Of a stretch of DNA of 64,000 nucleotides, positions 7,136 to 64,000 are shown in pieces (within the stretch, counting starts at the first letter, position 1; every line of letters begins with the position of its first letter). Position numbers and translations under genes: made by a program. The stretch is from Lytechinus pictus (taxonomy: Eukaryota). Under the pieces are notes generated by a model. The model ran no database searches. It was not told the origin of the DNA and saw only the letters and a program-made list of their open reading frames with translations. The stretch covers positions 14,570,001 to 14,634,000 of the forward strand of contig NC_087250.1 of assembly GCF_037042905.1 (NCBI RefSeq), written 5' to 3'.

Positions 7136-7166
7136 GATCTCAGTGAAATCTGAGGAGGATACTTAC

Positions 7167-7755: not shown

Positions 7756-7761
7756 TCTTTT

Positions 7762-30062: not shown

Positions 30063-30078
30063 GTAAGGCTCTATTTAA

Positions 30079-31826
30079 TTTGCTTCTCCTCACAACCATT
30101 CATTACATGTGTTAAACAACCAGTAACAGGGGAGCAGCATATAAATATGGTCAATATTTCATTTGCTGCTACTCATAACCATTCATTACGTGTGCGATAC
30201 AACTGGTAACATGGGAGCAGCATATAATATTGTTAATATTTCATTTGCTGCTACTCACAAACATTCATTACATGTGTTAAACAACTAGTAACAGGGGAGC
30301 AGCATATATACGGTCAATATTTCATATGCTGCTACTCATAACCATTCATTACATGTGTTAAACAACCAGGAACAGGGGAGCAGCATGTAAATATGCCATA
30401 ATACGGTCAATATTTCATATGCTGCTACTCATTACCATTCATTACATGTGTTAAACAACTAGTAACAGGGGAGCAGCGTACAAATATGGTCAATATTTCA
30501 TATGCTGCTACTCATTACCATTCATTACATGTGTTAAACAACTAGTAACAGGGGAGCAGCGTACAAATATGGTCAATATTTCATATGCTGCTACTCATTA
30601 CCATTCATTACATGTGTTAAACAACTAGTAACAGGGGAGCAGCGTACAAATATGGTCAATATTTCATTTGCTGCTCCTCAAACTCATTCATTACATGTGT
30701 TAAACAACTAGTAACAGGGGAGCAGCATATAAATTTGGTCAATATTTCATTTGCTGGTCCTCATAACCATTCATTACGTGTGTCATACAACTGGTAACAT
30801 GGGAGCAGTATATAACATTGTTAATATTTCATTTGCTGCTACTCATAACCATTCAGTACATGTGTTAAACAACCAGTAACAGGGGAGCAGTATATAAATA
30901 TGGTCAATATTTCATTTGCTGCTCCTCAAACTCATTCATTACATGTATTAAACAACTAGTAACAGGGGAGCAGCATATAAATTTGGTCAATATTTCATTT
31001 GCTGCTCCTCAAACTCATTCATTACATGTGTTAAACAACTAGTAACAGGGGAGCAGCATATAAATATGGTCAATATTTCATTTGCTGCTCCTCAAACTCA
31101 TTCATTACATGTGTTAAACAACCAGTAACAGGGGAGCAGCATAGAAATATGGTCAATATTTCATATGCTGCTACTCATTACCATTCATTACATGTATTAA
31201 ACAACTAGTAACAGGGGAGTAGCATATAAATATGGTCAATATTTCATTTGCTGCTCCTCAAACTCATTCATTACATGTGTTAAACAACCAGTAACAGGGG
31301 AGCAGCATATAAATTTGGTCAATATTTCATTTGCTGCTCCTCGCAACCATTCATTACATGTGTTAAACAACTAGTAACAGGGGAGCAGCATATAAATATG
31401 GTCAATATTTCATACGCTGCTCCTCAAACTCATTCATTACATGTGTTAAACAACCAGTAACAGGGGAGCAGCATATAAATATGTTCAATATTTCATTTGC
31501 TGCTCCTCAAACTCATTCATTACATGTGTTAAACAATCAGTAACAGGGGAGCAGCATAGAAATATGGTCAATATTTCATTTGCTGCTCCTCAAACTCATG
31601 CATTACATGTGTTAAATAACCAGTAACAGGGGAGCAGCATATAATGTTAATATTTCATTTGCTGCTGCCCCGAAACATTCATTACATGTGTTAAACAACT
31701 AGTAACAGGGAAGCAGCATACAAATATGGTCAATATTTCATTTGCTGCTCCTCACAACCATTCATTACATGTGTTAAACAACTAGTAACAGGGGAGCAGC
31801 GTATAAATATGGTCAATATTTCATTT
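30079..31826. repeat. 83-bp minisatellite, about 21 copies
   Basis: Unit CATTTGCTGCTCCTCAAACTCATTCATTACATGTGTTAAACAACTAGTAACAGGGGAGCAGCATATAAATATGGTCAATATTT; period 83 measured at 30431/30514/30597. Confidence 0.97.
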
Positions 31827-32473
31827 TACTACCGGTATTTTGTGTTTTGCAAATATGGCAAGGCATGAAAATCACACGTATGTGTGAGAGTTCAGCTTTT
31901 TATCTGATTTCAGATTTTTTTTTTTTTTTGGTTTTGATTTTCAGCTTAATTTCAACTTCTTTTAGCTTTCTTCTGTACAAAAACTGTGGGAGCTCTTTCT
32001 GTTTCAGTGTTTTTTTTCAACACTCTAGCTTTTTTCAGATCTTTTTATTTGTGACCATTCACACCCCTGAACACACTTTTGTACAACAGAGTGTGTATGC
32101 AGCAACAAACAGAATCAGTATTCACAGCTGCTAACCATGAAGAAAACTTTAAACTCTTTTTTTTTTTAAGATGATGTGAAAAGGAAAGTATAAAAGGGTA
32201 TCCAAAAAAGTATGGATTCAGGGTTGATAGGAGGGGGAAAAAAGAGTATCCTGAAATGAAATGCTGGGTAGCACTTCCTGGTTCCTGTTGCAGAAAAGTT
32301 ATTACTATGGCAACCTCCGTGGCCGCAGCACTCCACAGCCAATCAAAATCAAGGATTTCATGGAGGTAAACATTTGATGGCAAAGTTTAATACCATTGAA
32401 GAAAACTTCTGCAACAGGGTCCTGGATAGGACAAGTGGAAAAATTATTGATCACCTATAAGTTTTAAAATAGA

Positions 32474-35215
32474 TTAAACAGGTATAACACTATTGATGGC
32501 CCTATTGGATCTCATGCTCTTCTCAAACTGAGCCCAGAAGAGTTCCTGACCATCCTCATCATCTGTCCAGAGCATGTAAGGTTTGTTCTTACTCAAGAAC
32601 AACCGAACTAGGTACGGAAGGTCAGCATCCCGGATGTCCTCAAGGAAAATCAAGATGACCATGTCCAGTTTGGTATCGTTCATTTGCTCCAGGGCGATGC
32701 GCAACTTGGTCAAGAACCAAGCGTCATTTATACAGTTATAACTGATCAAAAGGACCGTCTTGAAACTGTTATCAACAACATAGTGAAGAGCATTGATGTA
32801 GAACATCGCAATGTTGAGGTCATTGTCCCCAAAGGCCACCTTCTGGAGATGTGGAAACCTTTCCCGCAGAACTGGCTTCAAGATGCCGTCAACCCATTCC
32901 TGGTCGTCTTCGTTATACATAATGTTTAGCTGGTATTCGTAGTCCTGTGCATCAAATTCATGGTTGATTTCCTCGTAGCCAAAGATGGCTAGCTTCAGGA
33001 GAAAGAACTTGTAGTTCAGCCACCATCGCTGCCGGTAAGCCACCAGGCCAATCACCAATACCAGAAGACCTGAAAGGCATACACTTGTGATCATCACAAA
33101 GTTTATTCCACAATATTTGTCTGGGTTAAATGTTAATATGGGTGAATCCACTTCTGCTTTGATTGATGTTAGTGAGCAGAGAGTTTGCTTTGGAAGCCTG
33201 AGTTCAATGTTGCCAGAACGAAGCCATTTCACAAACCAACTCAGTTGGCAAGTACAGGAGAATGGGTTTCCAGCAGCATCTATTCTCAGTGTCGTATTCG
33301 TTGGGAAGGACGTCATTGGTTCTATGGTGGTGATTCTGTTTTGTTGGATGAAAAGACTGTGCAAAGAGGTGGTTTCCTTGAACAATGTTCTTGGAATAGT
33401 CTCAAGTTTATTATTGCCTAAGAACAGAACGGCAAGGTGGTGTTGCCTTTGAAGCAGGGACTCGGGTACCTTCATAATCGCATTGTCCCGGACGTCCAGA
33501 GTTGTGAGGGCAGTCAGGCTATCAAAGACACCACAGCTCAGAACTGATATAGTACACTGAGACAGGTAAAGAATCCTGAGTTTCTTCATGGGGTTGAAAG
33601 TACCTGGTGCTAACATATCAAACTGATTTTGTCTCAGGTCCAGAACTATCAGGGAATTTAATCCCCAAAAGAGGGTCCTATTTGTCTTAGCATGGTGTAT
33701 ATCTGCACTTTTCAAGCTGCAGTCTCGCATGATTAGCCTATTGAGCGATGAAGCATTTGTAAATTGCCTCAGGGTGGTAATCTTTAACGGAGCAAAGGAC
33801 AAATCCAACACTTGCAGATGTCCCAGGTAGCGAAAAGCGCCATTGATGAGTTGCTGATTCTCGTTAGTGAGATGCAGCTCTTGAAGGTGTCTCAAGTTGA
33901 TAAAAGAGTATGGGGAGAATGACTGAGAGATGCCATTGTTGGACATGTTCAGAATTTGAAGATTTGTGAAACTCCACATTAAGAACCTTCGGATCGTTTT
34001 GAATTTGTTAAAAGACAGGTCTATATATTCTACTGAAGGAATTGTCACGTTGCTCCTCGGAATTTCTTCTATATTATTATGTGCCAAGTTGAGTTGGGAG
34101 AGTGAGAATAAGCCTGATACTAAATCAATAAACAGACTTGCAATCTGATTACTATTCAGCTTAAGTGTGGATAACATGTGCAGGCAGGAGAATGTCTTAA
34201 AGCTCAGAGTTGTCATGCAATTATAAGACAAATCCAAATCAATTAGGTTGTCCAATCCACAGAATGATTTACTAGATAAGTTGGCAACTCTGTTTCTATG
34301 AAGTGAAATTTTTTTTGTCTGATTGAACCCCCAAAACGCATAATCAGGTAAATATCGTATTCTGTTTCCTTTCATGATTATCATAGATATTTGACCATGA
34401 TCTTCTAGAGCAATGTGAGATTTGTTCCCTGAAATTATATATTCAATCTTGCAAGCATTTAAATCTAGATGTGTAATAGCACTTCTCCCTATAATCACTG
34501 AGGGAATAAAGTTTTGAAAATTGTTGTGTGACAGCAACAACCAATTCACTGTCTTCAAATAGGAGAAAACCTTAAAAGGAAGAGTCTGTAAGGCATTTCC
34601 TCTTAGGTATAGTTTTTCTAGTGAGCAGTTCTGTAGCGGTTCAAAGTCAAGGGCATCAAGAAAAGCGATTCTATTCTGAGATACATCAAGGGTCGTGATG
34701 CTGGTGGACCAAGGAAGTGCACTGCGTGGGAAAGAAACCAATCTGTTTTTGCCGAGAATGAGTATAGAGAGGAAACGGTTTTCACGGAACAACCCTGGGG
34801 GAAGAGAAACAAGTATGTTGTCTCGTAGACTTAATTTCCTGAGGTGACTCAGAGACTCAAAGGCACCATGTTCTATCTTCGACAGAACATTGTGTTCAAG
34901 TCCTAAGGAAGTGATATTTGGGTAATATGCAAAAGAGCCGTTGAACAAGGTTGATATCTTATTGAAGGAGAGATCGACCATTACTGTGTTCCGTGGAAGA
35001 TCCTGAGGAACAGATTTGAGGTGTAGGTGAGTGCAGATGGCTTTTGTTCCAAGGCTTGTGTTCTTGAGGATGCATTCTTCGGTCGACTCAGAGCTGAGAC
35101 TTCCTGAAACATCCTTGAAAGGCCGCTCAGCCAGAAGCAGGGACATGGTAAGGAGCAGTATCCCCAGACAGGAGGAAACCCTTGAGGCATTCATGGTGGT
35201 ATTAACAGCCAGCAT
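32474..35215 (-). CDS. Toll-like receptor copy A (intronless, 913 aa: signal peptide, LRRNT, about 20 LRRs, LRRCT, TM, TIR)
   Basis: LxxLxLxxNxL repeats; NPFSCTCQLSWFVKWL LRRCT; hydrophobic TM (FVMITSVCLSGLLVLVIGLVAY); C-terminal TIR domain. Confidence 0.97.
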   Translation of the reverse strand: MLAVNTTMNASRVSSCLGILLLTMSLLLAERPFKDVSGSLSSESTEECILKNTSLGTKAICTHLHLKSVPQDLPRNTVMVDLSFNKISTLFNGSFAYYPNITSLGLEHNVLSKIEHGAFESLSHLRKLSLRDNILVSLPPGLFRENRFLSILILGKNRLVSFPRSALPWSTSITTLDVSQNRIAFLDALDFEPLQNCSLEKLYLRGNALQTLPFKVFSYLKTVNWLLLSHNNFQNFIPSVIIGRSAITHLDLNACKIEYIISGNKSHIALEDHGQISMIIMKGNRIRYLPDYAFWGFNQTKKISLHRNRVANLSSKSFCGLDNLIDLDLSYNCMTTLSFKTFSCLHMLSTLKLNSNQIASLFIDLVSGLFSLSQLNLAHNNIEEIPRSNVTIPSVEYIDLSFNKFKTIRRFLMWSFTNLQILNMSNNGISQSFSPYSFINLRHLQELHLTNENQQLINGAFRYLGHLQVLDLSFAPLKITTLRQFTNASSLNRLIMRDCSLKSADIHHAKTNRTLFWGLNSLIVLDLRQNQFDMLAPGTFNPMKKLRILYLSQCTISVLSCGVFDSLTALTTLDVRDNAIMKVPESLLQRQHHLAVLFLGNNKLETIPRTLFKETTSLHSLFIQQNRITTIEPMTSFPTNTTLRIDAAGNPFSCTCQLSWFVKWLRSGNIELRLPKQTLCSLTSIKAEVDSPILTFNPDKYCGINFVMITSVCLSGLLVLVIGLVAYRQRWWLNYKFFLLKLAIFGYEEINHEFDAQDYEYQLNIMYNEDDQEWVDGILKPVLRERFPHLQKVAFGDNDLNIAMFYINALHYVVDNSFKTVLLISYNCINDAWFLTKLRIALEQMNDTKLDMVILIFLEDIRDADLPYLVRLFLSKNKPYMLWTDDEDGQELFWAQFEKSMRSNRAINSVIPV

Positions 35216-36329
35216 GATTGTGATCTGGAAGGTGTCACAACTGAAGGATCCTACCCATGTTACTCTCAGGATGGATAAATCTATCTGTAAGGACTGCTGG
35301 CCTTCAGGTAGTGGTGTAAAACTGTTTTCACAAGTACAAAATCAGCATCTCCTGTTTGGTTTCAGAAAAGCCAAAGTTGCATGTATTTGTACAATGACAA
35401 ACTGCAGTTTGGAATTGTCTTCCAGATTGCGATGTCACCACTGCCGAAGCAAATATCTTGATCAATTTAAATTGCTGCAAGAGAGTCAGGAATCTTGCCT
35501 TGTCCATAGACGTCCTCCCCTTGAAAGGTTGTCCGTAGCGACATTTGCTGCTGAATAATCATTTCAAATTCATTGTTGATATGAAGAACAAAGCAGCTGC
35601 AAAATTGATATGTTATGCTTCTGTGCAGATATGACTTGAAGCAAAGAAAGGATTGCAGAGATGAAGTGGCAAAGCAGACTGATGAATAAAGTCAAAGTTT
35701 CTGGAGCTCGAGTGCAATTTAAAATCACAAAATCATAGTTTGTTAACCGAGTGTCAAAGTCAGATAGCACTTGATAACAATGGAATGCTTAATCACTCTG
35801 AAATACATTTACATAACTTGAAGATTGCAACCAATTGTGCTTTTATTAGAAAAAAATAGTTTGTAATGAGTCTATTTTATAGCTGTTCTACTTTCGATTT
35901 CGGGTCTGATTCGTAATAAGTACTAGGAATGTACAATAATATTTTTTTTAAGTAAATAACTGGATAAACTTATTACCAGGATGTAAGGATATCAATGTTT
36001 CAGTTCTTTTAATAAAGCAAACATTTCCTGAGTACTCAAATCAATAATGATGAATGGTATTCTATTTCTTGGGTTTTTCTCTCTTTTTTTATCCCTTTCT
36101 TCCCTAAAGCAACCACTAGTCGAGCTGTATGAAATAAAATGATTTTAGTGGGTGTATTTAGCAATTTAACAGGAAATAATTGGTTTTATTTGCCCCCCAA
36201 AATTATTTTTTTCCTTTTGATATGAAACAAAAGTCTTTTGAATCTTTATTATAGAATGGGCTAATTATCTAAAGATATTGTTTTGTACATGTAGTATTAT
36301 GATATAACATACAGATATTCAATCACTAT

Positions 36330-36731
36330 GACCTGAATTCACAAAGGTGATTTTGAAAACCCACGGTTGAGTCCATGGTTTATGCAGATTTCCTGTATAA
36401 ATTACACTGATTTTACCGCGTATGCGCTTTTGTCACAGTGCGCCGAATTGACGCCTGTTACCATGGTTAGATATGCTATTTCATTCATGAGTCCACTGTT
36501 TTGAATTAATGAGTCCACTCTTCAAACAGTGGACTCATGAATAAAATAGCGTAACTAACCATGGTAACAGGCATCAATTTGGCGCACTGTGACAAAAGCG
36601 TGCATCAGCATTGGATATTTTTAAATACACGCGCCCGATACCTGCTAAATTAAGTGTAATTTATACAGGAAATCTGCATAAACCATGGATTCAACCGTGG
36701 GTTTTCAAAACCACCTTTGTGAATTCGGGAC
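36330..36731. mobile_element. Palindromic 400-bp MITE upstream of TLR A (paralogous copy 49080-49481; absent in unit C)
   Basis: Near whole-length inverted symmetry; TAT duplication; empty site AATCACTATATTTGTG near 61170. Confidence 0.85.
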
Positions 36732-39700
36732 TATATTTGTGAGATTTCAATGGTTTCCTTAAAAAAGTGTGGAAAGTGGAAACTTATATTTTCTTATTCT
36801 TTTACTATACATGTAAATGTATGGAACATATATGTTGATGCTTTTCGCTGAAAGACATATACAATGTGATGTATAGAACACTGGAAAGCAAGGAATTTTC
36901 ATTTTAAAAATCAGAATTCTTTGGACTTTGGTATACAGTGTGTCCCACAAAAAAAATGAAATCGAAATTTAGCAATGATTTATCATAACTTAATCACATA
37001 TACAATAGACAAATGACCTACCATTGTAAAGCTTAGAATCTCCTCTTTCAGCTGGTATAACATACAAGATTTCTCATCCATGCATGAGTGAATAAAAACA
37101 ATTTGAAGAAAGGATATCAAAAACTCATTTGGCAGTTGTTAAACAACTAGTAACAGGGGAGCAGCGTATAAATATGGTCAATATTTCATTTTACTACTGG
37201 TATTTTGTGTTTTGCAGATATGACAAGGCATGAGAATCACACGTAGGTGTGAGAGTTCAGCTTTTTATCTGATTTCATATTTTTTGGGGGGGGTTTGATT
37301 TTCAGCTTAATTTCAGTTAATTTTAGTTTTCCTCTGTTCAAAAACTGTGGGAGCTCTTTCTGTTTCAGTGTTTTTTTCCAACATTCTTTCAGCTTTTTTT
37401 CAGATATTTTTATTTGTGACCACTCACCCCTGACCACACTTTTTTGGAAGCAGGAGACCGTCAAAAACACGGATATACGTCGTGTAGTAATTCGAAATAC
37501 CACACGATGAATTATTTACGTCGTGTAGTAATTCGAATTACTACATTACACGACGCAATTCCGAATTACTACCCAACGATTTGTCATGACGTTAAATGAA
37601 TAGTGTCGCTACATCAAATAATTAAGGTCGTGTAGTAATTCGAATTACTACACGACGTAAATGATTACGTAGTGTAGTAATTCCAATTACTACACTACCT
37701 AAAGAATTACGTTGTGTAGTAAATAATTACTACACGACGTAATTCCGATTTACTGCTCAACGATTTAACGTCGTGACGTTAAATCAACCAATGAGATCGT
37801 TCGTTATTTGCGATGACGGCCGCAGACGTGAAACTACATACATTATATGTACCGCCGCCGTAGAGCTGTATATACAGCTCTATGACCGCCGCGTACAAAA
37901 TCAAATCCAGCTAGCTAGCTGCATGCATGATTATATGCGCCGTCCGTTATTGAAATATGATTGATCTCTCAGTTATTATTTTGCAATTATTCCCTAACAA
38001 GCTAACATCATTTGACAAGCATTTAATGTTGTGAAGTCAAATTCAGTTTTGTAAAGTGTGAAAAGCAATTTTTTAATAAATGCACCAGTATGTTTTTATG
38101 GGAACACTTTAGTTTTAATTTGTAAATATGTTAATATCATTGTAAATGATCATCTTCATGGAAAGGGGGAAAAGACCTTAAGGAGGAAGAGCTAAAATCA
38201 ATTCTTCCATGAGTAAATGGTTTAATTTCTGTCTTTAATCATTCATTTTCACACATTACCAATGTTTGCAAAACTCAAAAATATGATTCCCTTTTACCGC
38301 ATTTCATTCATTATTAATTTTCTTTTTGAAAATAAAAGGAAACAAGCAGTCTCTTTCTCAAAAGATATTTTTGTGCAAGAACACAATAAACAACTTTGTA
38401 ACAACAACGCGTCTCCTTACGGAGGGAAGGGACGCCCAACATGATTTACAAAGATCCCCTTTCTCCATGACCACAGATGCAATTCAAACAGGGTTTCTGC
38501 AAGATGTTGGTAAGAAGTTATAGATTCATACCCTGAAATAGCATTATGATTGATCTATCATAAAAGTTATCGATGTAGAAAGTCCGATTGTAATTTTGGG
38601 GGGGGGACATGAGGTATAGCATAAGAAATGTCAGGAAGGGGAGTCTTGTATAGCATAAGAATTATTCTACAGGAATTTGGTCCATAAATCAAAGCTAACA
38701 AAATGTGTATGAATTATTGGTCATTTATTGGAGAAGTTTAGTCTTACCTAGGATGTCACTTATTTTGTACAAAAGGAAATTTTCTGTTCTGTGATTTTGG
38801 ACACCCTCTATTTCCTGCCTTTAATTATTTTGTACCAACATCTTTACTGGGAATTTTTTTTACAGTCAACATCTCACAAGATGAATTTTTGTTGACCAAA
38901 AGATATAAGAGGACTTTGTTAGAGGTATAGATACAATTAGGTACAGAAAAAAAAGTAAACACGTTTTTTTTTTAAGGAACATTTGAATTTAATACTTTAT
39001 GAAAGTTAAAGTATTTAACTTTCATACAGGTTTCACAGTACAACAGATGATGTGATTTCACCAATCAACTGTGTTTTCTTCTTCAAACAAAAAATCAATG
39101 TGACATTGTGTACATGTATGTGTGTTGGGAATGTCATTCATGTTACACTTAAACAAATTGATATATAATCACAATGTATATGGCTGACAGTGGTTCCATA
39201 GTTCAGAAATATTCTGAACTAATTTCATACATAATACATCGCAAGGCTTATAGGTATCAATTAAACCCAACAGGCTAGAAAAGTATTTACCACAATAAGC
39301 AACCATGAAAACAAAAAGCTGGAGTAACTGCAGGGAATAAGTTATTTTAATTATTTGACATAGTTGATAAATACTGTTCTAAAAATACAAACATTCTAAA
39401 AAAGTACAGACCTTCATGGAATACTTTTCAATACTATTCAATACAGTATATATTGTAAAGAGAAAACCCCAAAACCTAACGCCCAACTAAGGCCGAAATA
39501 GAATACCTTTCACAATAAACACACATTGTACGATAGTAATATCAATTCTTTGTTTAAGATTTGAACATGTTCAATGAATGAATATTGCAGTAAAAATGTC
39601 TTTCTGGACTATACCTGCATAGTTAAAGACTGTACATGGCAATATCAATGCTTTGCCTAAGTCATGAACTAAAAACAAACAAACAAATAAAAACACCAGA

Positions 39701-53972: not shown

Positions 53973-55097
53973 GCACTTTTGTACAACAGAGTGTGTATGC
54001 AGCAACAAACAGAATCAGTATTCACAGCTGCCTACCATGAAGAAAACTCACTACTTTTTTTGAAAAGATAATGTGAAAAGGATAGTATAAAAGGTTTTTT
54101 TTTTTTAGTATGAATTCAGGGTTGATAGAAGGGGGAAAGAGAAAGTATCCTGAAATTAAATACCAGGGTTCCCAGCCCATCAGGGAAATCAGAGAAAATT
54201 ATTTTACTTTTTATCCAGTCAGGGAAAAATCAGGGAATTTGATAGAAAATACCTCAAATTGGGGGAAAATCAGGGAATTTTGATCAGCCCAAAAGTCAAA
54301 AGCACGGTAGTCAGATATTTTGTTGAATATTGAAACAACATCCATTGAATGGCTGGTTATGGTGGTAATAATTAGTTTTACATTATTGTTTTTATACTGA
54401 AAATACATGTAATTCACTGCAACAACTTAGAAACACATGCGAAAGTGGGAATGGGTTTAGATAATTATCAGGTAATTTTAAACTGAATCAGGGAATTTTG
54501 TTTTCTTGAAAATCTGGGAACCCTGAATACAGAGCAGTATACATGTACATTTAGGGTCAATGGGTAGATCTACTATATTATTGCATGCCTTCCACTTCTT
54601 AATAATTGTAATATTTATAGCCAGCTTTTTAGAGTGCTTTTTGCCCGAGGATGCAAAGTGCTGCTTTTATTACCCCAGCTGTAGCTCGAGTTGCCATCAC
54701 AAGCGCTCGCTCAGTGCATTCAAGGAATCAATCCTGCCGGTACCCATTCAACTTGCCTCGTTCGAGCGCAGTACAGTGTGGATAAATTTCTTGCTGACAG
54801 GAAAACACACCATAGATTCAAACCCACGACCCTCTGTTTAAAAGGCGAGAGTCAGAACCACCACATCATGATGCACCCACCCGGTTCCTGGTTGTAGAAA
54901 AGTTAATACTATGGGAACTTTGCCAACCAATGGCAACCTCCGTGGTCATAGCGCTCCACATCCAATCAAATTCAAGAATTTCATGGAGGTAACCATTTGT
55001 AGCAAAGTTCAATACCATTGAAGTAACCTTCTGCAACAGGGTCCTGGAGAGGACAAGTGGAAAAAAAATCTTGATCACCTATAAGTTTTAAAATAGA

Positions 55098-57839
55098 TTA
55101 AACAGGTATAACACTATTGATGGCCCTATTGGATCTCATGCTCTTCTCAAACTGAGCCCAGAAGAGTTCCTGACCATCCTCATCATCTGTCCAGAGCATG
55201 TAAGGTTTGTTCTTACTCAAGAACAACCGAACTAGGTACGGAAGGTCAGCATCCCGGATGTCCTCAAGGAAAATCAGGATGACCATGTCCAGTTTGGTAT
55301 CGTTCATTTGCTCCAGGGCAATGCGCAACTTGGTCAAGAACCAAGCGTCATTTATACAGTTATAGCTGATCAAAAGGACCGTCTTGAAACTGTTATCAAC
55401 AACATAGTGAAGAGCATTGATGTAGAACATCGCAATGTTGAGGTCATTGTCCCCAAAGGCCACCTTCTGGAGATGTGGAAACCTTTCCTGCAGAACTGGC
55501 TTCAGGACGCCGTCAACCCATTCCTGGTCGTCTTCGTTATACATAATGTTTAGCTGGTATTCGTAGTCCTGTGCATCAAATTCATGGTTGATTTCCTCGT
55601 AGCCAAAGATGGCTAGCTTCAGGAGGAAGAACTTGTAGTTCAGCCACCATCGCTGCCGGTAAGCCACCAGGCCAATCACCAATACCAGAAGACCTGAAAG
55701 GCATACACTTGTGATCATCACAAAGTTTATTCCACAATATTTGTCTGGGTTAAATGTTAGTATGGGTGAATCCACCTCTGCTTTGATTGATGTTAGTGAG
55801 CAGAGAGTTTGCTTTGGATGCCTGAGTTCAATGTTGCCAGATCGAAGCCATTTCACAAACCAACTCAGTTGGCAAGTACAGGAGAATGGGTTTCCAGCAG
55901 CATCTATTCTCAGTGTCGTATTCGTTGGGAAGGACGTCATTGGTTCTATGGTGGTGATTCTGTTTTGTTGGATGAACAGACTGTGCAAAGAGGTGGTTTC
56001 CTTGAACAATGTTCTTGGAATGGTCTCAAGTTTATTATTGCCTAAGAACAGAACGGCAAGGTGGTGTTGCCTTTGAAGCAGGGACTCGGGTACCTTCATA
56101 ATCGCATTGTCCCGGACGTCCAGAGTTGTGAGGGCAGTCAGGCTATCAAAGACACCACAGCTCAGAACTGATATAGTACACTGAGACAGGTAAAGAACCC
56201 TGAGTTTCTTCATGGGGTTGAAAGTACCTGGTGCTAACATATCAAACTGATTTTGTCTCAGGTCCAGAACTATCAGGGAATTTAATCCCCAAAAGAGGGT
56301 CCTATTTGTCTTAGCATGGTGTATATCTGCACTTTTCAAGCTGCAGTCTCGCATGATTAGCCTATTGAGCGATGAAGCATTTGTAAATTGCCTCAGGGTG
56401 GTAATCTTTAACGGAGCAAAGGACAAATCCAACACTTGCAGATGTCCCAGGTAGCGAAAAGCGCCATTGATGAGTTGCTGATTCTCGTTGGTGAGATGCA
56501 GCTCTTGAAGGTGTCTCAAGTTGATAAAAGAGTATGGGGAGAATGACTGAGAGATGCCATTGTTGGACATGTTCAGAATTTGAAGATTTGTGAAACTCCA
56601 CATTAAGAACCTTCGGATCGTTTTGAATTTGTTAAAAGACAGGTCTATATATTCTACTGAAGGAATTGTCACGTTGCTCCTCGGAATTTCTTCTATATTA
56701 TTATGTGCCAAGTTGAGTTGGGAGAGTGAGAATAAGCCTGATACTAAATCAATAAATAGACTTGCAATCTGATTACCATTCAGCTTAAGTGTGGATAACA
56801 TGTGCAGGCAGGAGAATGTCTTCAAGCTCAGAGTTGTCAAGAGATTATAAGACAAATCCAAATCAGTTAGGTTGTTCAATCCACAGAATGATTTACTAGA
56901 TAAGCTGGCAACTCTGCTGTTGTGAAGCGAAATAGTTTTTGTCTGATTGAACCCCCAAAACGCATAATCAGGTAAATATCGTATTCTGTTTCCTGTCATG
57001 ATTATCATAGATATTTGCCCGTGATCTTCTACAGCAATGTGAGATTTGTTCCGTGAAATTATATTTTCAATATTGCAAGAACTTAAATCTAGATGTGTAA
57101 TAGCACTTCTCCCTAAAACCGCAGATGGGGTAAAGTTTAGAAAATTGTTCTTTGACAGCGACATCCACTTGACTGTATTTAAAGTGGAGAAAACCTTAAA
57201 AGGAAGAGTATGTAAGGCATTTCTTCCAATATATAGTTTTTCCAGTGAGCAGTTCTCTAGCGGGTCAAAGTCAAGGGCATCAAGGAAAGCGATTCTATTC
57301 TGAGATACATCAAGGGTCGTGATGCTGTTGGACCAAGGAAGTGCACTGCTTGGAAAAGAAACCAATCTGTTTTTGCCAAGGATGAGTATAGAGAGTAAAA
57401 GGTTCGCACGGAACAACCCTGAGGGTAGAGAATCCAATCTGTTGTGTTTTAGAGATAAGTTCCTGAGGTGGCTCAGAGGCTCAAAGGCACCATGTTCTAT
57501 CTTCGACAGAACATTGTGTTCAAGTCCTAAGGAAGTGATATTTAGAAGATATGCAAAAGAACCGTTGAGCAAGGTTGGTATCGAATTAAAGGATAGATCG
57601 ACCGTTACTGCGTTGCTTGGGAGATCCTGAGGAACAGATTTGAGGTGTAGGTGAGAGCAGATGGCTTTTGTTCCAAGGTTTTTGTTCTTGAGGATGCATC
57701 CTTCGGTCGACTCAGAGCTGAGACTTCCTGAAACTTCCTTGACAGGCCACTCAGCCAGAAGCAGGGACATGGTAAAGAACAGTATCCCCAGACAGGAGGA
57801 AACCCTGGAGACGTTCATTGTGGTATTAACAGCCAGCAT
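55098..57839 (-). CDS. Toll-like receptor copy C (intronless, 913 aa from the ATG at 57839)
   Basis: Same architecture. The ORF-track start at 57872 is a TTG; the ATG equivalent to copies A and B is at 57839. Confidence 0.96.
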   Translation of the reverse strand: MLAVNTTMNVSRVSSCLGILFFTMSLLLAEWPVKEVSGSLSSESTEGCILKNKNLGTKAICSHLHLKSVPQDLPSNAVTVDLSFNSIPTLLNGSFAYLLNITSLGLEHNVLSKIEHGAFEPLSHLRNLSLKHNRLDSLPSGLFRANLLLSILILGKNRLVSFPSSALPWSNSITTLDVSQNRIAFLDALDFDPLENCSLEKLYIGRNALHTLPFKVFSTLNTVKWMSLSKNNFLNFTPSAVLGRSAITHLDLSSCNIENIISRNKSHIAVEDHGQISMIIMTGNRIRYLPDYAFWGFNQTKTISLHNSRVASLSSKSFCGLNNLTDLDLSYNLLTTLSLKTFSCLHMLSTLKLNGNQIASLFIDLVSGLFSLSQLNLAHNNIEEIPRSNVTIPSVEYIDLSFNKFKTIRRFLMWSFTNLQILNMSNNGISQSFSPYSFINLRHLQELHLTNENQQLINGAFRYLGHLQVLDLSFAPLKITTLRQFTNASSLNRLIMRDCSLKSADIHHAKTNRTLFWGLNSLIVLDLRQNQFDMLAPGTFNPMKKLRVLYLSQCTISVLSCGVFDSLTALTTLDVRDNAIMKVPESLLQRQHHLAVLFLGNNKLETIPRTLFKETTSLHSLFIQQNRITTIEPMTSFPTNTTLRIDAAGNPFSCTCQLSWFVKWLRSGNIELRHPKQTLCSLTSIKAEVDSPILTFNPDKYCGINFVMITSVCLSGLLVLVIGLVAYRQRWWLNYKFFLLKLAIFGYEEINHEFDAQDYEYQLNIMYNEDDQEWVDGVLKPVLQERFPHLQKVAFGDNDLNIAMFYINALHYVVDNSFKTVLLISYNCINDAWFLTKLRIALEQMNDTKLDMVILIFLEDIRDADLPYLVRLFLSKNKPYMLWTDDEDGQELFWAQFEKSMRSNRAINSVIPV

Positions 57840-58884
57840 GATTGTGATCTCGAAGGTGTCACAACTTAACAATCCTACCCAAGTTACTCTCAGGATGGAT
57901 AAATCTATCTGTAAGACTGCTGGGTGCTGGCTTTCAGGTAGTGGTGTAAAAATGTTTTCACAAGTACAAAATCAGCATCTCCTTTTTTAATTTCAGAAAA
58001 GCCAAAGCTGCATGTATATGTACAATGACAAACTGCAGTTTGGAATTGTCTTCCAAATTGCGATGTCACCACTGCCAAAGCAAATGTCTTGATCACTTTA
58101 AATTGCAGCAAGAGAGTCAGGAATCGTGCCTCGTCCATAGACCTCCTCCCCTTGAAAGGTTGTCTGTAGCGACATTTGCTGCTGAATAATCATTTCAAAT
58201 TCATTGTTGACATGAAGAACAAAGCAGCTGCAAAATTGATATGTTATGCTTCTGTGCAGATATGACTTAAAACAGTCTGAAGCAAAGAAAGGATTACAGA
58301 GATGAAGTGGCAAGGGACGGATTGTTCCGCAAATCAGTGATTTCATCAGTGTATCGAAAGGAGACTGATGAATAAAGTCAGAGTTTCTGGAGCTCGAATG
58401 CAACTTAAAATCACAAAATCGTAGTTTGATAACCGAGTGTCAAAGGTCAGATAGCTCCTGATAACATTGGGATTGTTAATCTCTCTGAAATACATGTACA
58501 CTGTACATCATTGGAAGGTTGCAACCTAACTGTGCTTTTATTAGAAAACAATAGTTTGTAATGAGTCTATTTTATAGCTGTTCTACTTTCGATTTCGGGT
58601 CTGATTCGTAATAAGTACTAGGAATGTACAATTATATTGTTATTAAGTAAATAACTGGATAAATTTATTACCAGGATGTAAGGATTTTAATGTTTCACTT
58701 CCTTTAATAAAGCAAACATTTTCTGAGTACTCAAATCAATAATGATGAATGGTGTCTTATTGGGTTTTTCCTACCTTCTCTCTTTTTTTATCCCTTTCTT
58801 CCCCAAAGCAACCACTAGTTGAACTGTATGAAATAAAATAATTTTAGTAGGTGTATTTAGCAATTTAGCAGGAAATAATTGGTT

Positions 58885-61029
58885 TTGTCTCGCCTGCTTA
58901 GCGGAGTGAGACATAGGTATCACTATTTCCGGCGGCGTCGGCATCATCGACTCGTCGTCGTCATCAACAATTGTGTTGTACACGCAATAACTTTCTATAG
59001 CTTCGAGGTAGGATCACCAAATTCATACCAGAGGTCCATCTCCTGAAGGCACAGGTCAAGTTCGAATATGAGTCGAATTTGATTAAGGTCAAAGGTCAAT
59101 GAACTTTCCATGACTGGCACTGTGCTATGTTGTACACATAATAACTTTCTATATCTTCGAGGTGGGATCACCAAATTCATACCAGAGGTTCATCTCCTGA
59201 AGGCACAGGTCAAGTTCGAATATAAGTCGAATTTGATTAAGGTCAAAGGTCAATGAACTTTCCATGACTGGCACTGTGCTGTGCTGTACACACAATAACT
59301 TTCTATATCTTCAAGGTAGGATTGCCAAATTGATACAAGGGGTCCATTTTTGAAGGTGCAGGTCAAGTTCGAATATGAGTTGAATTTGATAAAGGTCAAA
59401 TGTCAATTAACTTTCCATGACTTCACTGTGCTGTGTTGTACACATAATAACTTTTTATATCTTCGAGGTAGGATTGCCAAATTCATACAAGAGGTCCATC
59501 TCTTAAAGGTGCAGGTCAAGTTCGAATGTGAGTTGAATTTGATTAAGGTCAAAGGTCAATGAACTTTCCATGACTGGCACTGTGCTGTGTTGTACACACA
59601 ATAACTTTCTGTAGCTTCGAGGTGAGATCGCCAAATTCATAACAGAGGTCCATCTCCTGAAGGCACAGGTCAAGTTCGAATATGAGTCGAATTTGAATAA
59701 GGTCAAGGGTCAAAGGTCAATGAACTTTCCATGACTGGCACTGTGCTATGTTGTACACATAATAACTTTCTACATCTTCGAGGTGGGATCACCAAATTCA
59801 TACCAGAGGTCCAACTCCTGAAGGCGCAGGTCAAGTTCGAATATGAGTCGAATTTGAATAAGGTCAAAGGTCAATGAACTTTCCATGACTAGCACTGTGC
59901 TGTGTTGTACACACAATAACTTTCTGTAGCTTCGAGGTGAGATTGCCAAATTCATAACAGAGGTCCATCTCTTGAAGGTGCAGGTCAAGTTCAAATGTAA
60001 GCCGAAGTTGAATAAGGTCAAAGGTCAATGAACTTTCCATGACTGGCACTGTGCTGTGCTGTACACACAATAACTTTCTATATCTTCGAGGTAGGATTGC
60101 CAAATTGATACAAGGGGTCCATCTTTTGAAGGTGCAGGTCAAGTTCGAATATGAGTTGAATTTGATAAAGGTCAAAGGTCAATGAACTTTCCATGACTTC
60201 ACTGTGCTGTGTTGTACACATAATAACTTTTTATATCTTCGAGGTAGGATTGCCAAATTGATACAAGAGGTCCATCTCTTAAAGGTGCAGGTCAAGTTCG
60301 AATGTGAGTTGAATTTGATTAAGGTCAAAGGTCAATGAACTTTCCATGACTGGCACTGTGCTGTGTTGTACACACAATAACTTTCTATAGCTTCGAGGTG
60401 GGATTGCCAAACTCGTAACAGAGGTCCATCTCTTGAAGGTGCAGGACATTTTGCCCCCACATCTATCATAGCCTTTAATCAAAATGTGCTTATAAAAAAA
60501 TGCACTCTTTTAAACTTCCTACTCATACCCTATTACTTATTTTATCTTGTAGTACTTCACTCTTGCATCCTTTACTTATCATATGCACACAGATCAATTT
60601 CGAAAACCCTACTGCTAAAATGAAGGCAAGATGGCTAAAAATCACACACAATAAGTTTTTATATTTATCTTTCATGTACAATCTTCTCCTCCATTTTTTC
60701 AAACAATAAGTTTGCCATAACACCTTAATAATTAATTTAATTCTACAATTTTACTCACATTATTATTAATTACATTCTTTTTCACAAACATTAATTTCCT
60801 TACTTGCATGGAAATAATTATAGCTTCATAGTATTAACAGCATTCTTAGTGTTATCTGATTTTCTAGGGATAAAGTAGGCCTATACCATTAATGCATATG
60901 TAAACTGTCAAAACCACAATTCACCCCCTTAACTGCTGACAGCCTCAGAAGTCATATAGCATAGTTTTGACATGCAGTCTCTTCATGACTGCAATATGCA
61001 GGCGAGACAACGCTTGGCGTTTGCCTTGT
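58885..61029 (+). mobile_element. Helentron-associated/HINE (DINE-1-like) non-autonomous element with central tandem array
   Basis: Subterminal inverted repeat TTGTCTCGCCTGC / GCAGGCGAGACAA; short 3' hairpin; (CGG/CGT/CAT)n microsatellite near the 5' end; inserted in a T-run that is empty in units A and B. Confidence 0.78.
58973..60446. repeat. About 154-bp tandem repeat, about 9.5 copies, most containing AGGTCAAAGGTCA
   Basis: Period measured at 58977/59131/59285/59437. Confidence 0.96.
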
Positions 61030-61372
61030 ATTTGCCCCCCAAATTTATTTTTTTCCTTATGATATGAAACAAAAAAGTCTTTTGAATCTTTATTATAGAA
61101 TGGGCTAATTTTCTAAAGATATTGTTTTGTACATGTAGTATTATGATATAACATACAGATATCCAATCACTATATTTGTGAGATAGGTGTTCAATGGTTT
61201 CCTTGAAAAAGTGTGGAAAGTGGAAACTTATGTTTTCTTAATGTATGGAACATTGTTTTTTGATATGTTGATGCTTTTCACTGAAAGTCATACAATGTGA
61301 TGTACATGTATAGAACACTGGAAAGCAAGGAATTTTCATTTTAAAAATCTGAATTCTTTGGACTTTAGTATA

Positions 61373-62156
61373 CAGTGCATCCCACAAAAAATGAAATCGA
61401 GATTTAGCAATGGTTTATCATAACTTCATCACATATACAATAGACAAATGACCTACCATTGTAAAGCTTAGAATCTCCTCTTTCAGATAGTATAACTAAC
61501 AAGATTTCTCATCCATGCATGAGTGAATAAAAACAATTTGAAGAAAGGATATCAAAAACTCATTTGGTGGGGGATATCAATATGTCAACAAGAATATCAC
61601 ATGCCTAATAGTTCAATAACTGCTCTTTAATTTGATAATGATAGCTAAATCGCATAAAATGGTCAAGAAATAACAAAGATATGTTTCTTCGATACATTGC
61701 TTGTATTTCCATAATTTCATAAAATATATAGTACATGTTTTCACCGGTTTCACACCTAAGCTATCACATGGTTAACAAAAGACTTTATGCATGGCTGATC
61801 GTCAACAAAACGAGGTGTCGAATAAGGCTGAAAGCTATCCTGTGAAACCTCTTCATTTTATGAAATTATTGGAATTCGAGCCTTATTTCAAATAAACATA
61901 ACTTTGTTATATTTCTTAGCCATTTTCTGTAATTGAGGTATCAAAGAGCAGATATTGAACTTTTTTTTAAATTATTTTCATTTTGAAACCCAGATACCGC
62001 CCGCCAAGTGACTTTTGTTTCCTCTCTTCAAATTGCTTTTGCTCATTGATACATGAATGAGGAATAATCCTAAGTTATTTCAAATGAAAGAGCAGACTCT
62101 AAGCTTTACAACGATAGGTCATTTGTCTATTTGATTTGCGGTTGTGGGACACACTG
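61373..62156. mobile_element. Tc1/mariner-type MITE, complete in unit C and truncated at the duplication junction in units A and B
   Basis: TA|CAGTG..TCCCAC ... GTGGGACACACTG|TA; left parts recur at about 36935-37132 and 49684-49878. Confidence 0.8.
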
Positions 62157-64000
62157 TAATGACTCTATATCTGCCCAGCATTGATTGTTGACTGGGATCC
62201 CTTTTCATGAAGACATGTTACAAAAGCAACATGTAAATGTATAACAAGTTTACTATTGGCTAATCAGATTCAGTGATTTCAGTGGCCCGTATTCTGAAGT
62301 CAGGTTTAACTTAGACCATGGTCTAACTCTCTGCTAAAATTATGGGGAGCCAAAAATTCAAAAATTTTGTTTGCATTGTATATTCTTATGTTTACTATTT
62401 TGTTTCCTTTTGCTTTCATAATAAAGAATAATACTACAGTTATCATTCCCAGACAATTACAAACAATTTGGGTGTCATATCAGTTAATAAATTGAATGTG
62501 TACTGTTAGGGATTTGTGCTCCAATTGGCTCTCCATAATTAAACCACAACTTTAAACCAGGGTTTAATTTAAACCCGAGTTCAGAAAACAGGCCAGTAGC
62601 TTTAAGCTATTATTGCAAATTTGTTATTATAACAAGTTTTATGAAACCAGGTCCAAATGTAAGTACATGTAGGACATTAGAAGTGACTCTCATTGAAAGT
62701 AATATTATCACTGCATCCATATCCAGATACTTTCAATTAGTAATTTAGCTGTTTGCGACCCTTCGAGAAATAAACAAAGCTCTTAACTGATCAGTATTAA
62801 AGAGGGATCCTCCCCAAATGAAAAGCTATGTTTAAAGGAAAAAGATAAATTAGACAAGAAGATCTAGGGGAAAGTTTGAACAATATCAGATAAGCAATAA
62901 AAGAAGTTATGAATTTTTTAAGTTTTGAAAAAATTGGTAGTCACTATACCCATGGAGACTTCAAATTGGCTGCATCGGTGACTGATGTCATAGTGGTGTA
63001 CATGTACGACAAGGACTACTCATCTATTAATACTCCAATACATAAAATGGCTAACTTGTCATTTCTTTTTCAAAAGTTTAACTTCAAATTATATTTTTCT
63101 TTTTTTCATGAAGACATAAAAGAAAGTGCTACCTTATTAGTTATGTTTTGATTACTGCCCCAGGGGAATGTAGACCTGTACTCAATGGAAATAATATGAC
63201 ACCTAGACAGATCTTTGTCATTTGATTGGCTGTTTGACATCGATCATTTGGACCATTTTACAATGACGTCATCGACCGTGCAATTTAGGATCCATTCATC
63301 GTGTAATTTTGGATCCATACGATTTTGTCCATTGCACGCGTGCACCGAGACTGCGTGTTTACAGCGCGCATGTTTGCAAAGCTCTCTTAAAATGTACTGT
63401 AAGTTGGAACAAAGCATTCATATACATGTATCTATAATTACAATCCCTTCATAGAATGCATGGAATTGACAATCAATATTCAACAGACCAAGCTCGCACT
63501 GCACAATCATATTTTGCACCTAAATTGATCAATTTCATATGAAAAATAATCTAGTTTTAAGTGTCATATAAACCAAACAATGAATGTTCCTTCATTCGTG
63601 CAATGGACAGAATACTTCATTCGGTGAAAGATGAAGTATTCTGTCCATTGCACTCATAAACATTCATTATTTGTATAATCATAAATCCCTGATAAATTAC
63701 GTGGCCTTTGGGAAAGTTGTCCCTACCACTTGTCAAAACTTACGTAGTCTTAATGTAGGTATCTAAATTTAAAAACAGCCGTAGATTTCTTATTGCTTAT
63801 CTGATTTCTTTCAAACTTTTCTGTTTTATTTTATATTTTTCTCCTCTATCACACAACAATTTATGACCATGGTTGGATTCCGCTTTAAAATAAAAGTTTA
63901 ATTTTTTATTTAATAATAATAATAATATGTTCATTTATATAGCGCTCTTACAATATATCATCGTTTCACAGCGCTTTACACAATGATTGAATAGAAAATT

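What the first reader, a model, noticed from the sequence alone, without database searches (positions are those of the whole stretch)
30063..64000. Expanding TLR immune-receptor array nested antisense inside an intron of the chromatin gene ACTL6A
Seen: ACTL6A exon 7 ends at 30062 with a normal donor, and I find no further ACTL6A exon in the next 33.9 kb. That stretch holds three intact, intronless TLR ORFs on the opposite strand. Known: ACTL6A/BAF53 is a conserved BAF/NuA4/INO80 subunit of about 430 aa, so about 200 aa must lie downstream; sea-urchin TLRs are typically intronless and tandemly expanded. Inference: a birth-and-death immune cluster is growing inside a housekeeping-gene intron. 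Copy-number change would then alter host intron length by 5-13 kb per step, and every ACTL6A pre-mRNA would be a full-length antisense transcript of all three TLRs.
Basis: partly seen in the sequence, partly recalled or inferred. Interest (0 to 1): 0.82.

Follow-up and report, generated by a model that had tools for sequence, protein, structure and literature searches.

The report
TLR gene triplet inside ACTL6A intron
Three nearly identical, intact Toll-like receptor genes sit back-to-front inside one 34-kb intron of the single-copy chromatin gene ACTL6A in a sea urchin (most likely Lytechinus pictus); this is a real, tidy example of a nested, recently duplicated immune gene cluster, but both nesting and TLR arrays are well-known things.

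Summary
ACTL6A exon 7 ends at 30062 (AAG|GTAAGG). The next exon starts 338 bases past the window end, at extended coordinate 64338, behind a canonical acceptor. The two exons match human ACTL6A residues 192-226 and 227-277 back to back. All 13 exons splice into an uninterrupted 438-aa protein, and the gene is single-copy.

Intron 7 (34,275 bp) holds three intact 913-aa intronless TLR genes on the minus strand, each with a signal peptide, LRRs, a TM segment and a TIR domain. They lie in a 29.8-kb tandem array, 87% of the intron.

The array grew in steps:
- an ancestral unit of about 5.4 kb was duplicated;
- a transposon with inverted ends landed in the spacer;
- the 9.9-kb unit was duplicated again;
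- a 2.95-kb palindromic insertion followed.

Blockwise dS (0.004 to 0.14) shows gene conversion. Omega is 0.03-0.09 in the TM/TIR part, so the copies are constrained.

S. purpuratus carries an intact sister-clade TLR, antisense, 4.4 kb upstream of its ACTL6A exon 8. The nesting is therefore probably ancestral and the triplication lineage-specific.

Expression and any host/nested interplay remain untested, because only assembled contigs were available. Nested genes and urchin TLR arrays are both known, so interest is modest.

The parts
12273..12297 (+). ACTL6A coding exon 1 (MSGGVYGG...), donor GAG|GTGAGT
18312..18388 (+). ACTL6A exon 2
   Evidence: Pfam Actin hit; tblastn; splice model
21397..21580 (+). 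ACTL6A exon 3
22394..22494 (+). ACTL6A exon 4
23508..23605 (+). ACTL6A exon 5
27773..27867 (+). ACTL6A exon 6
29956..30062 (+). ACTL6A exon 7 (= human ACTL6A residues 192-226), donor AAG|GTAAGG
30063..64000 (+). ACTL6A intron 7. It runs on to extended coordinate 64337 (34,275 bp in all). Exon 8 is at G000:C6:14634338-14634486 (= L001:338-486). Exons 9-13 lie at extended coordinates 71597-71711, 73580-73660, 74473-74568, 76290-76400 and 78022-78099 (stop).
   Evidence: exon 8 is single-copy in the genome
30072..31826 (.). 83-bp tandem array of 21 copies, starting 10 nt after the exon-7 donor. Part of its monomer matches unit sequence 37121-37191.
31772..61567 (-). The whole TLR tandem array (29.8 kb, 87% of intron 7)
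   Evidence: self-blastn
32474..35215 (-). TLR copy T1: 913 aa, intronless (signal peptide, LRRs, TM 704-727, TIR)
45224..47965 (-). TLR copy T2: 913 aa; 51 nt / 25 aa differences from T1, clustered at aa 370-548
55098..57839 (-). TLR copy T3: 913 aa from the ATG at 57839; 120 nt / 68 aa differences from T1, almost all at aa 10-355
37444..44101 (.). Insertion in the spacer of unit 1, bounded by inverted ends of about 250 bp (37445-37695 / 44098-43848, 89%). Its shorter counterpart in unit 2 is about 50195-53973. Neither the left flank of the array nor unit 3 has it.
40673..42762 (.). Near-perfect palindrome (two 1004-nt arms, 82-nt spacer) inside the unit-1-specific 2.95-kb insertion 40072-43022. 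The arm ORFs give weak GIY-YIG hits.
58972..60445 (.). 154-bp tandem array (9.5 copies) upstream of T3, interrupting the homology to units 1 and 2

Best explanation
Intron 7 of the only ACTL6A (BAF53) gene of this sea urchin holds a small TLR subfamily locus on the opposite strand. The genome is most likely Lytechinus pictus.

How the array grew. A single TLR unit of about 5.4 kb was probably already in this intron in the common ancestor with Strongylocentrotus. In this lineage it then expanded by DNA-level tandem duplication, in this order:
1. The 5.4-kb unit was duplicated, giving T3 and the T1/T2 ancestor.
2. A transposon with inverted ends landed in the spacer.
3. The resulting 9.9-kb unit was duplicated, giving T1 and T2.
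4. A 2.95-kb palindromic, Penelope-like insertion landed in unit 1.
Patches of gene conversion then shuffled LRR blocks between copies.

State of the genes. All three copies remain intact and under purifying selection, strongest on the TM/TIR half, so they are most likely working receptors with slightly different ectodomains. The host gene is unharmed, because the whole array is removed with the intron. Its only visible cost is an intron grown from roughly 4.5-10 kb to 34 kb.

Shown: the geometry, the intactness, the order of duplications, the conversion mosaic, the selective constraint, and the presence of a TLR at this position in S. purpuratus.
Inferred: the duplication mechanism (unequal crossing-over or replication slippage between units), the ancestral nesting, TLR expression, and the view that host read-through antisense RNA has no special role.
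For: Host gene.
- 13 GT-AG exons give a 438-aa ORF that aligns end to end with ACTL6A proteins.
- Exons 7 and 8 abut at human residues K226|E227.
- Exon 8 occurs only once in the genome.
- Intron 7 has canonical splice sites.

The TLRs.
- LRR_8 about 10 times plus TIR.
- TIR matches TLR2/15/3 structures at E 2e-12.
- A TM segment and 14 N-glycosylation sequons.

The array.
- Copies are spaced 12,750 and 9,874 bp apart; units are 94-99% identical.
- The left flank 31772-32465 is collinear with 37137-37443, 44102-44290 and 45007-45207. This shows a 5.4-kb ancestral unit and a 6.66-kb insertion with inverted ends.

Mosaic and selection.
- dS 0.004 (T1-T2, aa 1-360) against 0.13 (either copy vs T3).
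- dS 0.016 (T1-T3, aa 361-550) against 0.12-0.14 (either copy vs T2).
- Omega 0.03-0.08 for aa 551-913.
- Long-term omega 0.2-0.3 overall and 0.08-0.09 in the TIR part.

Tree and timing.
- The S. purpuratus clade is sister to the L. pictus clade; ((T1,T2),T3) and the dispersed C20/C21 copies all have full support.
- dS within the array is at most 0.14, against 0.48 to the dispersed copies and 0.98 to S. purpuratus.

Synteny. S. purpuratus locus L005 has ACTL6A exon 8 at 12526-12675 and an intact 914-aa antisense TLR at 5358-8099. No exon 7 lies between them.

Species.
Against: - Copy number could not be checked against raw reads. Only Logan contigs were served, so depth is meaningless.
- Expression is only hinted at. 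A run guessed to be RNA from a related organism has contigs over the CDS only, while a DNA run continues upstream. No run is on record as RNA.
- The S. purpuratus exon 7 could not be fetched. 'Nested' in that species therefore rests on exon 8 being an internal exon with the TLR just upstream of it.
- Reciprocal monophyly of the two species' clades could in principle come from concerted evolution rather than late duplication.
Confidence: 0.85

Rival explanations
1. The three copies are partly an assembly artefact. Divergent haplotypes of a highly heterozygous urchin were laid in tandem, so the true haploid copy number is one or two.
For: Divergence between copies (dS 0.004-0.14) overlaps what alleles can show in sea urchins (general knowledge). 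No read-depth test was possible. A near-perfect 2-kb palindrome in unit 1 is the sort of thing long-read artefacts can also produce.
Against: Three copies cannot be two haplotypes of a one-copy locus. The intron has no N-run or contig break. The units differ by discrete events (a transposon with inverted ends in units 1 and 2 only, a 2.95-kb insertion in unit 1 only, a 154-bp array in unit 3 only), which form a nested history rather than allelic copies. No extra haplotig copy of this locus exists elsewhere in the assembly.
Confidence: 0.08
2. Host and nested genes are functionally coupled. Constitutive ACTL6A transcription through the array gives antisense RNA or transcriptional interference that keeps these TLRs low except where their own promoters win. 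Alternatively, TLR induction perturbs ACTL6A elongation or isoforms. Under this reading the position is retained by selection.
For: The same position and orientation are seen in S. purpuratus, despite dS of about 1 between the species. Host/nested interplay is documented in mammals (PMC11694760; PMC13309782 abstract).
Against: There are no expression data. Simple synteny retention explains the shared position. Copies of the same subfamily have left the intron for chromosomes C20 and C21 and stay intact under the same constraint, so the receptors do not need the host. The mammalian study's section heading reports no strong orientation bias for nested genes (PMC11694760).
Confidence: 0.12
3. The TLR copies are intact but silent passengers: very young duplicates that have not yet had time to decay.
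For: T1 and T2 are very young in parts (dS 0.004). The Pfam TIR hit is weak (23.9 bits against a 21.3 cut-off). No run on record as RNA holds them.
Against: There are 9-11 synonymous but only 1-3 non-synonymous changes in the 363-codon TM/TIR part between copies (omega 0.03-0.08). Omega is 0.08-0.09 there against paralogues at dS 0.48 and against S. purpuratus at dS about 1. All six L. pictus and the S. purpuratus members keep full ORFs. Contigs of a run guessed to be RNA cover just the CDS.
Confidence: 0.1
4. Misjoin at the 83-bp array: exon 7 and the TLR block are not truly adjacent, and ACTL6A is broken or split here.
For: A 1.75-kb satellite begins 10 nt after the donor. Satellites are classic places for assembly errors.
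Against: Exons 1-13 are collinear, in order and on one strand across the block, and give a full ORF. There is only one ACTL6A in the genome. S. purpuratus independently shows a TLR antisense upstream of exon 8. The satellite monomer shares sequence with the array unit, so it belongs here.
Confidence: 0.02

Closest known systems
Host/nested gene pairs in animals (catalogued for human and mouse in PMC11694760). The classic multi-gene case is human NF1, whose large intron carries EVI2A, EVI2B and OMG on the opposite strand (from general knowledge).
   Same: Complete protein-coding genes with their own promoters lie inside one long intron of a broadly expressed host. Here they are on the opposite strand, as in NF1. 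Several nested genes share one intron. The host splices normally.
   Different: Here the nested genes are paralogues produced in situ by recent tandem duplication, so the nest itself is a growing multigene array and accounts for 87% of the intron. The NF1 guests are unrelated or old.
Sea urchin TLR multigene families (Buckley & Rast 2012, PMC3367398)
   Same: Single-exon TLRs of the vertebrate-like type, genomically clustered in tandem arrays, with lineage-specific recent expansions and variation concentrated in LRRs.
   Different: This is a small subfamily: 6 close members in this genome and at least 4 sequences in S. purpuratus. It is about 30% identical to SpTlr1.1, which belongs to the expanded S. 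purpuratus TLR repertoire. No positive selection was detected (omega <1 in all blocks). That paper does not contain the word 'nested'.
ACTL6A/BAF53A, the actin-related subunit of BAF, INO80 and NuA4/TIP60 complexes (PDB 6LTJ, 7VDV and others)
   Same: 438-aa protein, 59-69% identical over the alignable length to metazoan ACTL6A proteins. Exon 7 and exon 8 match human residues 192-277 without a gap.
   Different: Nothing unusual in the protein. Only the size and content of intron 7 are notable.

Membership tests
Toll-like receptor (vertebrate-like, single cysteine cluster type) | Extracellular leucine-rich-repeat solenoid | tested here: met
   PF13855 LRR_8 E 4e-67 to 3e-71, with 10-11 stretches per copy, plus LRR_4/LRR_5
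Toll-like receptor (vertebrate-like, single cysteine cluster type) | Single transmembrane helix between ectodomain and TIR, and an N-terminal signal sequence | tested here: met
   The only strong hydrophobic 21-mer window is at residues 704-727. A hydrophobic N-terminus lies at residues 16-29. Cysteines 654/656/680/702 precede the TM, as in an LRR-CT. No dedicated signal-peptide predictor was run.
Toll-like receptor (vertebrate-like, single cysteine cluster type) | Cytoplasmic TIR domain | tested here: met
   PF01582 at 23.9 bits against a 21.3 cut-off. Residues 761-903 align to the TIR domains of TLR15/TLR2/TLR3/TLR6/TLR1 structures, best E 2.3e-12.
Toll-like receptor (vertebrate-like, single cysteine cluster type) | Signalling function (ligand recognition, MyD88-type adaptor recruitment) | not testable with these tools
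   Only selective constraint is available: omega 0.03-0.09 on the TM/TIR part
ACTL6A / BAF53 (actin-related protein) | Actin-fold protein orthologous to ACTL6A over its full length | tested here: met
   Pfam Actin hits on 6 exons. Exons 7 and 8 hit only ACTL6A chains in the PDB at E 1e-9 to 1e-12. The 438-aa spliced ORF aligns over residues 1-439 with a 432-aa ACTL6A representative.
ACTL6A / BAF53 (actin-related protein) | Functional (not a truncated or duplicated pseudogene) copy | tested here: met
   No stop or frameshift, and all 12 introns are GT-AG. Exon 8 has a single match in the 812-Mb genome. Transcription was not tested.
Host/nested gene pair | The nested gene lies wholly between two exons of the host that are joined in the mRNA | tested here: inconclusive
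   The geometry is met: the TLR ORFs at 32474-57839 lie inside intron 30063-64337, whose flanking exons encode contiguous residues. The exon 7-8 junction in RNA was not observed, because no raw RNA reads were available.
Birth-and-death multigene array | Recent in-situ duplicates (births) | tested here: met
   Units are 94-99% identical at 12,750 and 9,874 bp spacing. ((T1,T2),T3) has 100/100 support.
Birth-and-death multigene array | Pseudogenised or deleted members (deaths) | tested here: not met
   All three array members and the three dispersed members have full ORFs without stops. No TLR fragment is seen elsewhere in the intron.

The most novel reading that the evidence does not exclude
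The ACTL6A intron-7 site is an old 'nursery' for this TLR subfamily, at least as old as the Lytechinus-Strongylocentrotus ancestor. Constant host transcription keeps the site open and recombination-prone, and supplies antisense RNA that damps the TLRs in non-immune cells. New copies are born there and later seed other chromosomes (C20, C21). The position would then be selected for, not just inherited.
Probability: 0.1. Interest if true: 0.6.

Novelty: new member of a known kind. Interest (0 to 1): 0.3.

Why it matters
This is a clean, fully resolved natural example of an immune multigene array growing inside the intron of an essential single-copy gene. The step-by-step history can be read from the sequence: unit duplication, transposon landing, second duplication, gene conversion.

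It offers a convenient locus for two questions:
- whether host read-through affects nested innate-immunity genes;
- how much intron growth a housekeeping gene tolerates. Here one intron is 52% of the gene, measured from ATG to stop.

It also warns annotators. In S. purpuratus the same region appears to have split the ACTL6A model into fragments.

It does not change what is known about TLRs, ACTL6A or nested genes.

Tried and rejected
1. Reaching S. purpuratus ACTL6A exon 7, to prove nesting there.
- A search with an ACTL6A N-terminal half gave 120 listed hits, none echinoid; the best was 73% identical to the L. pictus exons.
- Look-ups of P0053, of the L005 TLR ORF and of P0003 were not on record.
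- L005 itself holds only exon 8, even at E<=10.

2. Synteny in other echinoids through the ENA proteins P0006 and P0054: no DNA was served.

3. Read depth, tandem-junction and expression tests.
- All runs are Logan contigs, so depth, strand and transcript ends are not available.
- A 'goes back' record in X2 (37427 to 32335) lies in repeated elements and was not taken as a tandem junction.
- A 70-nt skip in an X1 contig (32307-32376) has no GT-AG on either strand (sequence printed), so I read it as an indel polymorphism, not an intron.

4. Positive selection on the LRRs: omega is below 1 in every block (0.3-0.9), so it is not claimed.

5. Retroposition as the origin of the dispersed C20/C21 copies. 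Homology to the array is limited to about 2.96 kb, roughly transcript size. At 18% CDS divergence the flanks may simply be unalignable, so this is left open.

6. The conserved block in intron 8 (L001:5507-7192, 69% to S. purpuratus) is a GAT/GAC simple repeat giving a poly-Asp ORF, not a gene.

7. Rfam found no RNA family at gathering score in the intron. The only sub-threshold hit, MIR821, is the palindrome's hairpin.


Full report
WHERE AND WHAT. The window is G000:C6:14570001-14634000, plus strand, of an 812-Mb genome in 368 contigs. The genome is almost certainly Lytechinus pictus. Protein P0003, named 'Lytechinus pictus' by NCBI and recorded on a contig of 17,200,559 bp, is contained 100% in an ORF on G000 contig C21, which has exactly that length. 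I fetched 30 kb beyond the window (L001-L003). 'Extended' coordinates are window coordinates continued past 64000.

THE HOST GENE.
- Pfam Actin matches on contig C6 lie inside the window (18.3, 23.5 and 27.8 kb) and 10-14 kb beyond its end, on the same strand.
- A motif scan and tblastn with four ACTL6A representatives located every exon.
- A junction-by-junction search for GT-AG pairs that keep the frame gave one coherent model of 13 coding exons. The exons are 12273-12297, 18312-18388, 21397-21580, 22394-22494, 23508-23605, 27773-27867, 29956-30062, 64338-64486, 71597-71711, 73580-73660, 74473-74568, 76290-76400 and 78022-78099.
- The spliced ORF is 438 aa, [17 protein letters not shown]...KKCP, without a stop. 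It aligns over its full length with ACTL6A proteins at 59-69% identity.
- Exon 7 matches human ACTL6A residues 192-226 and exon 8 matches residues 227-277. The only significant PDB hits are ACTL6A chains.
- The donor is ATCGAAG|GTAAGG and the acceptor TTGCTGATAG|GAATCT.
- Exon 8 has a single match in the whole genome, so this is the only ACTL6A gene and cannot be a decaying spare.
- Intron 7 is 34,275 bp (30063-64337). The other eleven introns are 0.8-7.1 kb. Intron 7 alone is 52% of the 65.8 kb from ATG to stop.
- No ACTL6A-like segment occurs inside it at E<=1.

THE GUESTS.
- The only ORFs of 200 aa or more in the intron are three minus-strand ORFs of 913 aa (T1 32474-35215, T2 45224-47965, T3 55098-57839) and two arm ORFs of a palindrome.
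- Each TLR has 10-11 LRR_8 stretches and a TIR hit above Pfam's cut-off.
- The last 234 residues align to the TIR domains of TLR15/2/3/6/1/10 structures, best E 2.3e-12.
- There is one strong transmembrane window (704-727), a hydrophobic N-terminus, LRR-CT-like cysteines and 14 N-glycosylation sequons in the ectodomain.
- They are therefore complete, intronless, vertebrate-like TLRs of the architecture that Buckley & Rast describe for most sea urchin TLRs (PMC3367398).

ANATOMY AND HISTORY OF THE ARRAY.
- Copies recur at 12,750 and 9,874 bp, and units are 94-99% identical.
- The sequence left of T1 (31772-32465) is collinear with three pieces of unit 1: 37137-37443, 44102-44290 and 45007-45207.
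- The ancestral unit was therefore about 5.4 kb: a spacer of about 0.7 kb, the TLR, and about 1.9 kb upstream.
- The segment 37444-44101 is an insertion bounded by inverted ends of about 250 bp (37445-37695 vs 44098-43848, 89%). Unit 2 has the same insertion in shorter form (about 50195-53973). Unit 3 has none.
- Unit 1 alone carries a further 2.95 kb (40072-43022), containing a near-perfect palindrome with two 1004-nt arms.
- Unit 3 alone has a 154-bp tandem array (58972-60445) in its upstream region.
- Homology ends at about 61567. The array thus spans 31772-61567, which is 29.8 kb or 87% of the intron.
- The most economical order of events is: (1) duplication of the 5.4-kb unit; (2) transposon insertion in one spacer; (3) duplication of the resulting 9.9-kb unit, giving T1 and T2; (4) the palindromic insertion. 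This agrees with the protein tree ((T1,T2),T3), which has 100% support.

DIVERGENCE, CONVERSION, SELECTION.
- T1-T2 differ at 51 of 2742 nt, T1-T3 at 120 and T2-T3 at 148. The differences come in blocks.
- In codons 1-360, T1 and T2 are nearly identical (dS 0.004), while T3 is at dS 0.13 from both.
- In codons 361-550, T1 and T3 are nearly identical (dS 0.016), while T2 is at dS 0.12-0.14.
- In codons 551-913, all pairs are at dS 0.04-0.05.
- Such a mosaic is what gene conversion or unequal exchange between array members produces.
- Omega is 0.03-0.08 in the TM/TIR part and 0.3-0.9 in the LRR blocks. Nothing exceeds 1, so I claim constraint, not positive selection.
- Against the nearest paralogues (dS 0.48) and the S. 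purpuratus copy (dS about 0.98), omega is 0.2-0.3 overall and 0.08-0.09 in the cytoplasmic part.

RELATIVES AND SYNTENY.
- Besides the three array copies, the genome has three intact members at 76-77% identity, two on C21 and one on C20. The next relatives are at 51% or less.
- The big S. purpuratus TLR family is distant: Tlr1.1 is 30% identical.
- In S. purpuratus (Spur_5.0, AAGJ06000020.1), a gene model (P0015, 172 aa) contains ACTL6A exon 8. Its locus L005 shows exon 8 at 12526-12675 (86% identical to L. pictus exon 8).
- In L005, 4.4 kb upstream on the opposite strand, lies an intact 914-aa TLR ORF (5358-8099). It is 68% identical to T1 and 82% to P0004.
- No other ACTL6A exon lies in the 24.3-kb locus, even at E<=10.
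- Since exon 8 encodes internal residues, that TLR lies in the S. purpuratus equivalent of intron 7, unless the assembly is wrong there. I could not fetch exon 7 itself.
- A second S. purpuratus member (P0004) lies about 250 kb away on the same contig, in an unrelated context.
- In the tree, the S. purpuratus sequences form one clade and the six L. pictus sequences its sister clade.
- Most simply, one gene sat antisense in ACTL6A intron 7 in the common ancestor of the two lineages, which separated about 50 My ago by commonly cited estimates (my own knowledge). It then duplicated independently in each lineage.
- On that scale the dispersed L. pictus copies left about half-way (dS 0.48 of 0.98). 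The array copies are younger than about a seventh of that time, and in converted blocks far younger.

EXPRESSION.
- No run on record as RNA holds the TLR, and only Logan contigs could be laid, so depth, strand and ends are not available.
- One run of the same organism has a 3191-nt contig, 99.3% identical, over 32597-35781.
- A run of a related organism, guessed to be RNA, has contigs only over the CDS (32504-35253), while a DNA run of that organism continues to about 36075.
- This is compatible with transcription but proves nothing.
- The statement that every ACTL6A pre-mRNA is antisense to all three TLRs follows from geometry. Whether it matters is unknown.

HOW UNUSUAL IS IT?
- Over a tenth of mouse and human genes contain a nested gene, preferentially in a long intron and without strong orientation bias (PMC11694760; PMC13309782 abstract).
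- Single-exon TLRs in tandem arrays with lineage-specific bursts are the textbook picture for sea urchins (PMC3367398).
- No paper in the library links ACTL6A and urchin TLRs. The TLR review does not use the word 'nested'.
This fits the expectation that, with many single-exon TLRs and large introns, some will be nested.
- The case is therefore a new, well-resolved instance of known phenomena. Its particular features are that the guests are in-situ paralogues, that they make up 87% of the intron of an essential single-copy gene, and that the position appears conserved between two urchin families.

RIVALS.
- Haplotype-derived false duplication cannot be excluded without reads. It is unlikely given three copies, no gaps, no extra haplotig and unit-specific insertions that nest into a history.
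- A misjoin at the 83-bp satellite is very unlikely. The exons are collinear across it, the S. purpuratus arrangement agrees, and the satellite monomer shares sequence with the array unit.
- Silent young duplicates are argued against by the synonymous excess in the TIR half.
- Functional host-guest coupling remains possible but has no positive evidence. The dispersed paralogues do well outside the intron.

Noticed in passing
window 40673-42762 (inside the unit-1-only insertion 40072-43022): Near-perfect palindrome: two 1004-nt arms with an 82-nt spacer. Rfam finds no hammerhead ribozyme here at E<=1. The only hit is a spurious MIR821 match to the hairpin. An assembly fold-back artefact is not excluded.
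   Followed up: partly
window 37444-44101 and about 50195-53973: Non-autonomous element with inverted ends of about 250 bp and internal 42-bp repeats, inserted in the TLR spacer before the T1/T2 duplication. No long ORF apart from the later palindromic insertion.
   Followed up: partly
window 30072-31826: 83-bp satellite (21 copies, about 89% identical) starting only 10 nt after the ACTL6A exon-7 donor. Part of its monomer matches array sequence 37121-37191, so it seems to have grown out of the array's spacer.
   Followed up: partly
window 21674-22198: 525-base N run inside ACTL6A intron 3, between exons 3 and 4.
   Followed up: no
L001:5507-7192 (extended 69507-71192, ACTL6A intron 8): 561-aa ATG ORF that is 61% Asp and 20% Gly, a GAT/GAC simple repeat. 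It is 69% alignable to S. purpuratus L005:19500-21080, where a 799-aa product is annotated. Probably simple sequence mistaken for a gene.
   Followed up: yes
L004 and L005 (S. purpuratus Spur_5.0, AAGJ06000020.1, 43.89-44.17 Mb): The gene calls there look wrong. A 136-aa RPL32 model spans more than 280 kb. ACTL6A exon 8 sits in a 172-aa fragment model (P0015) with a non-ACTL6A start. The intact 914-aa TLR ORF is called as a 527-aa spliced product. The nested array region seems to break automatic annotation.
   Followed up: partly
L006 and L007 (G000:C21:1840200-1850000 and 13827000-13836800); L008 (C20): The dispersed members of the subfamily include two copies 12 Mb apart on C21 in opposite orientation, sharing more than 7 kb at 96.5% identity (dS 0.02). 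A third on C20 is at 92.5%. These are recent long-range segmental duplications. Their homology to the ACTL6A array is limited to about 2.96 kb around the CDS.
   Followed up: partly
window 32307-32376: A contig of run X1 (same organism) joins 32306 directly to 32377. It skips 70 nt exactly at the left edge of the 9.9/12.75-kb duplication unit, and there is no GT-AG. This looks like an indel polymorphism at the unit boundary.
   Followed up: no
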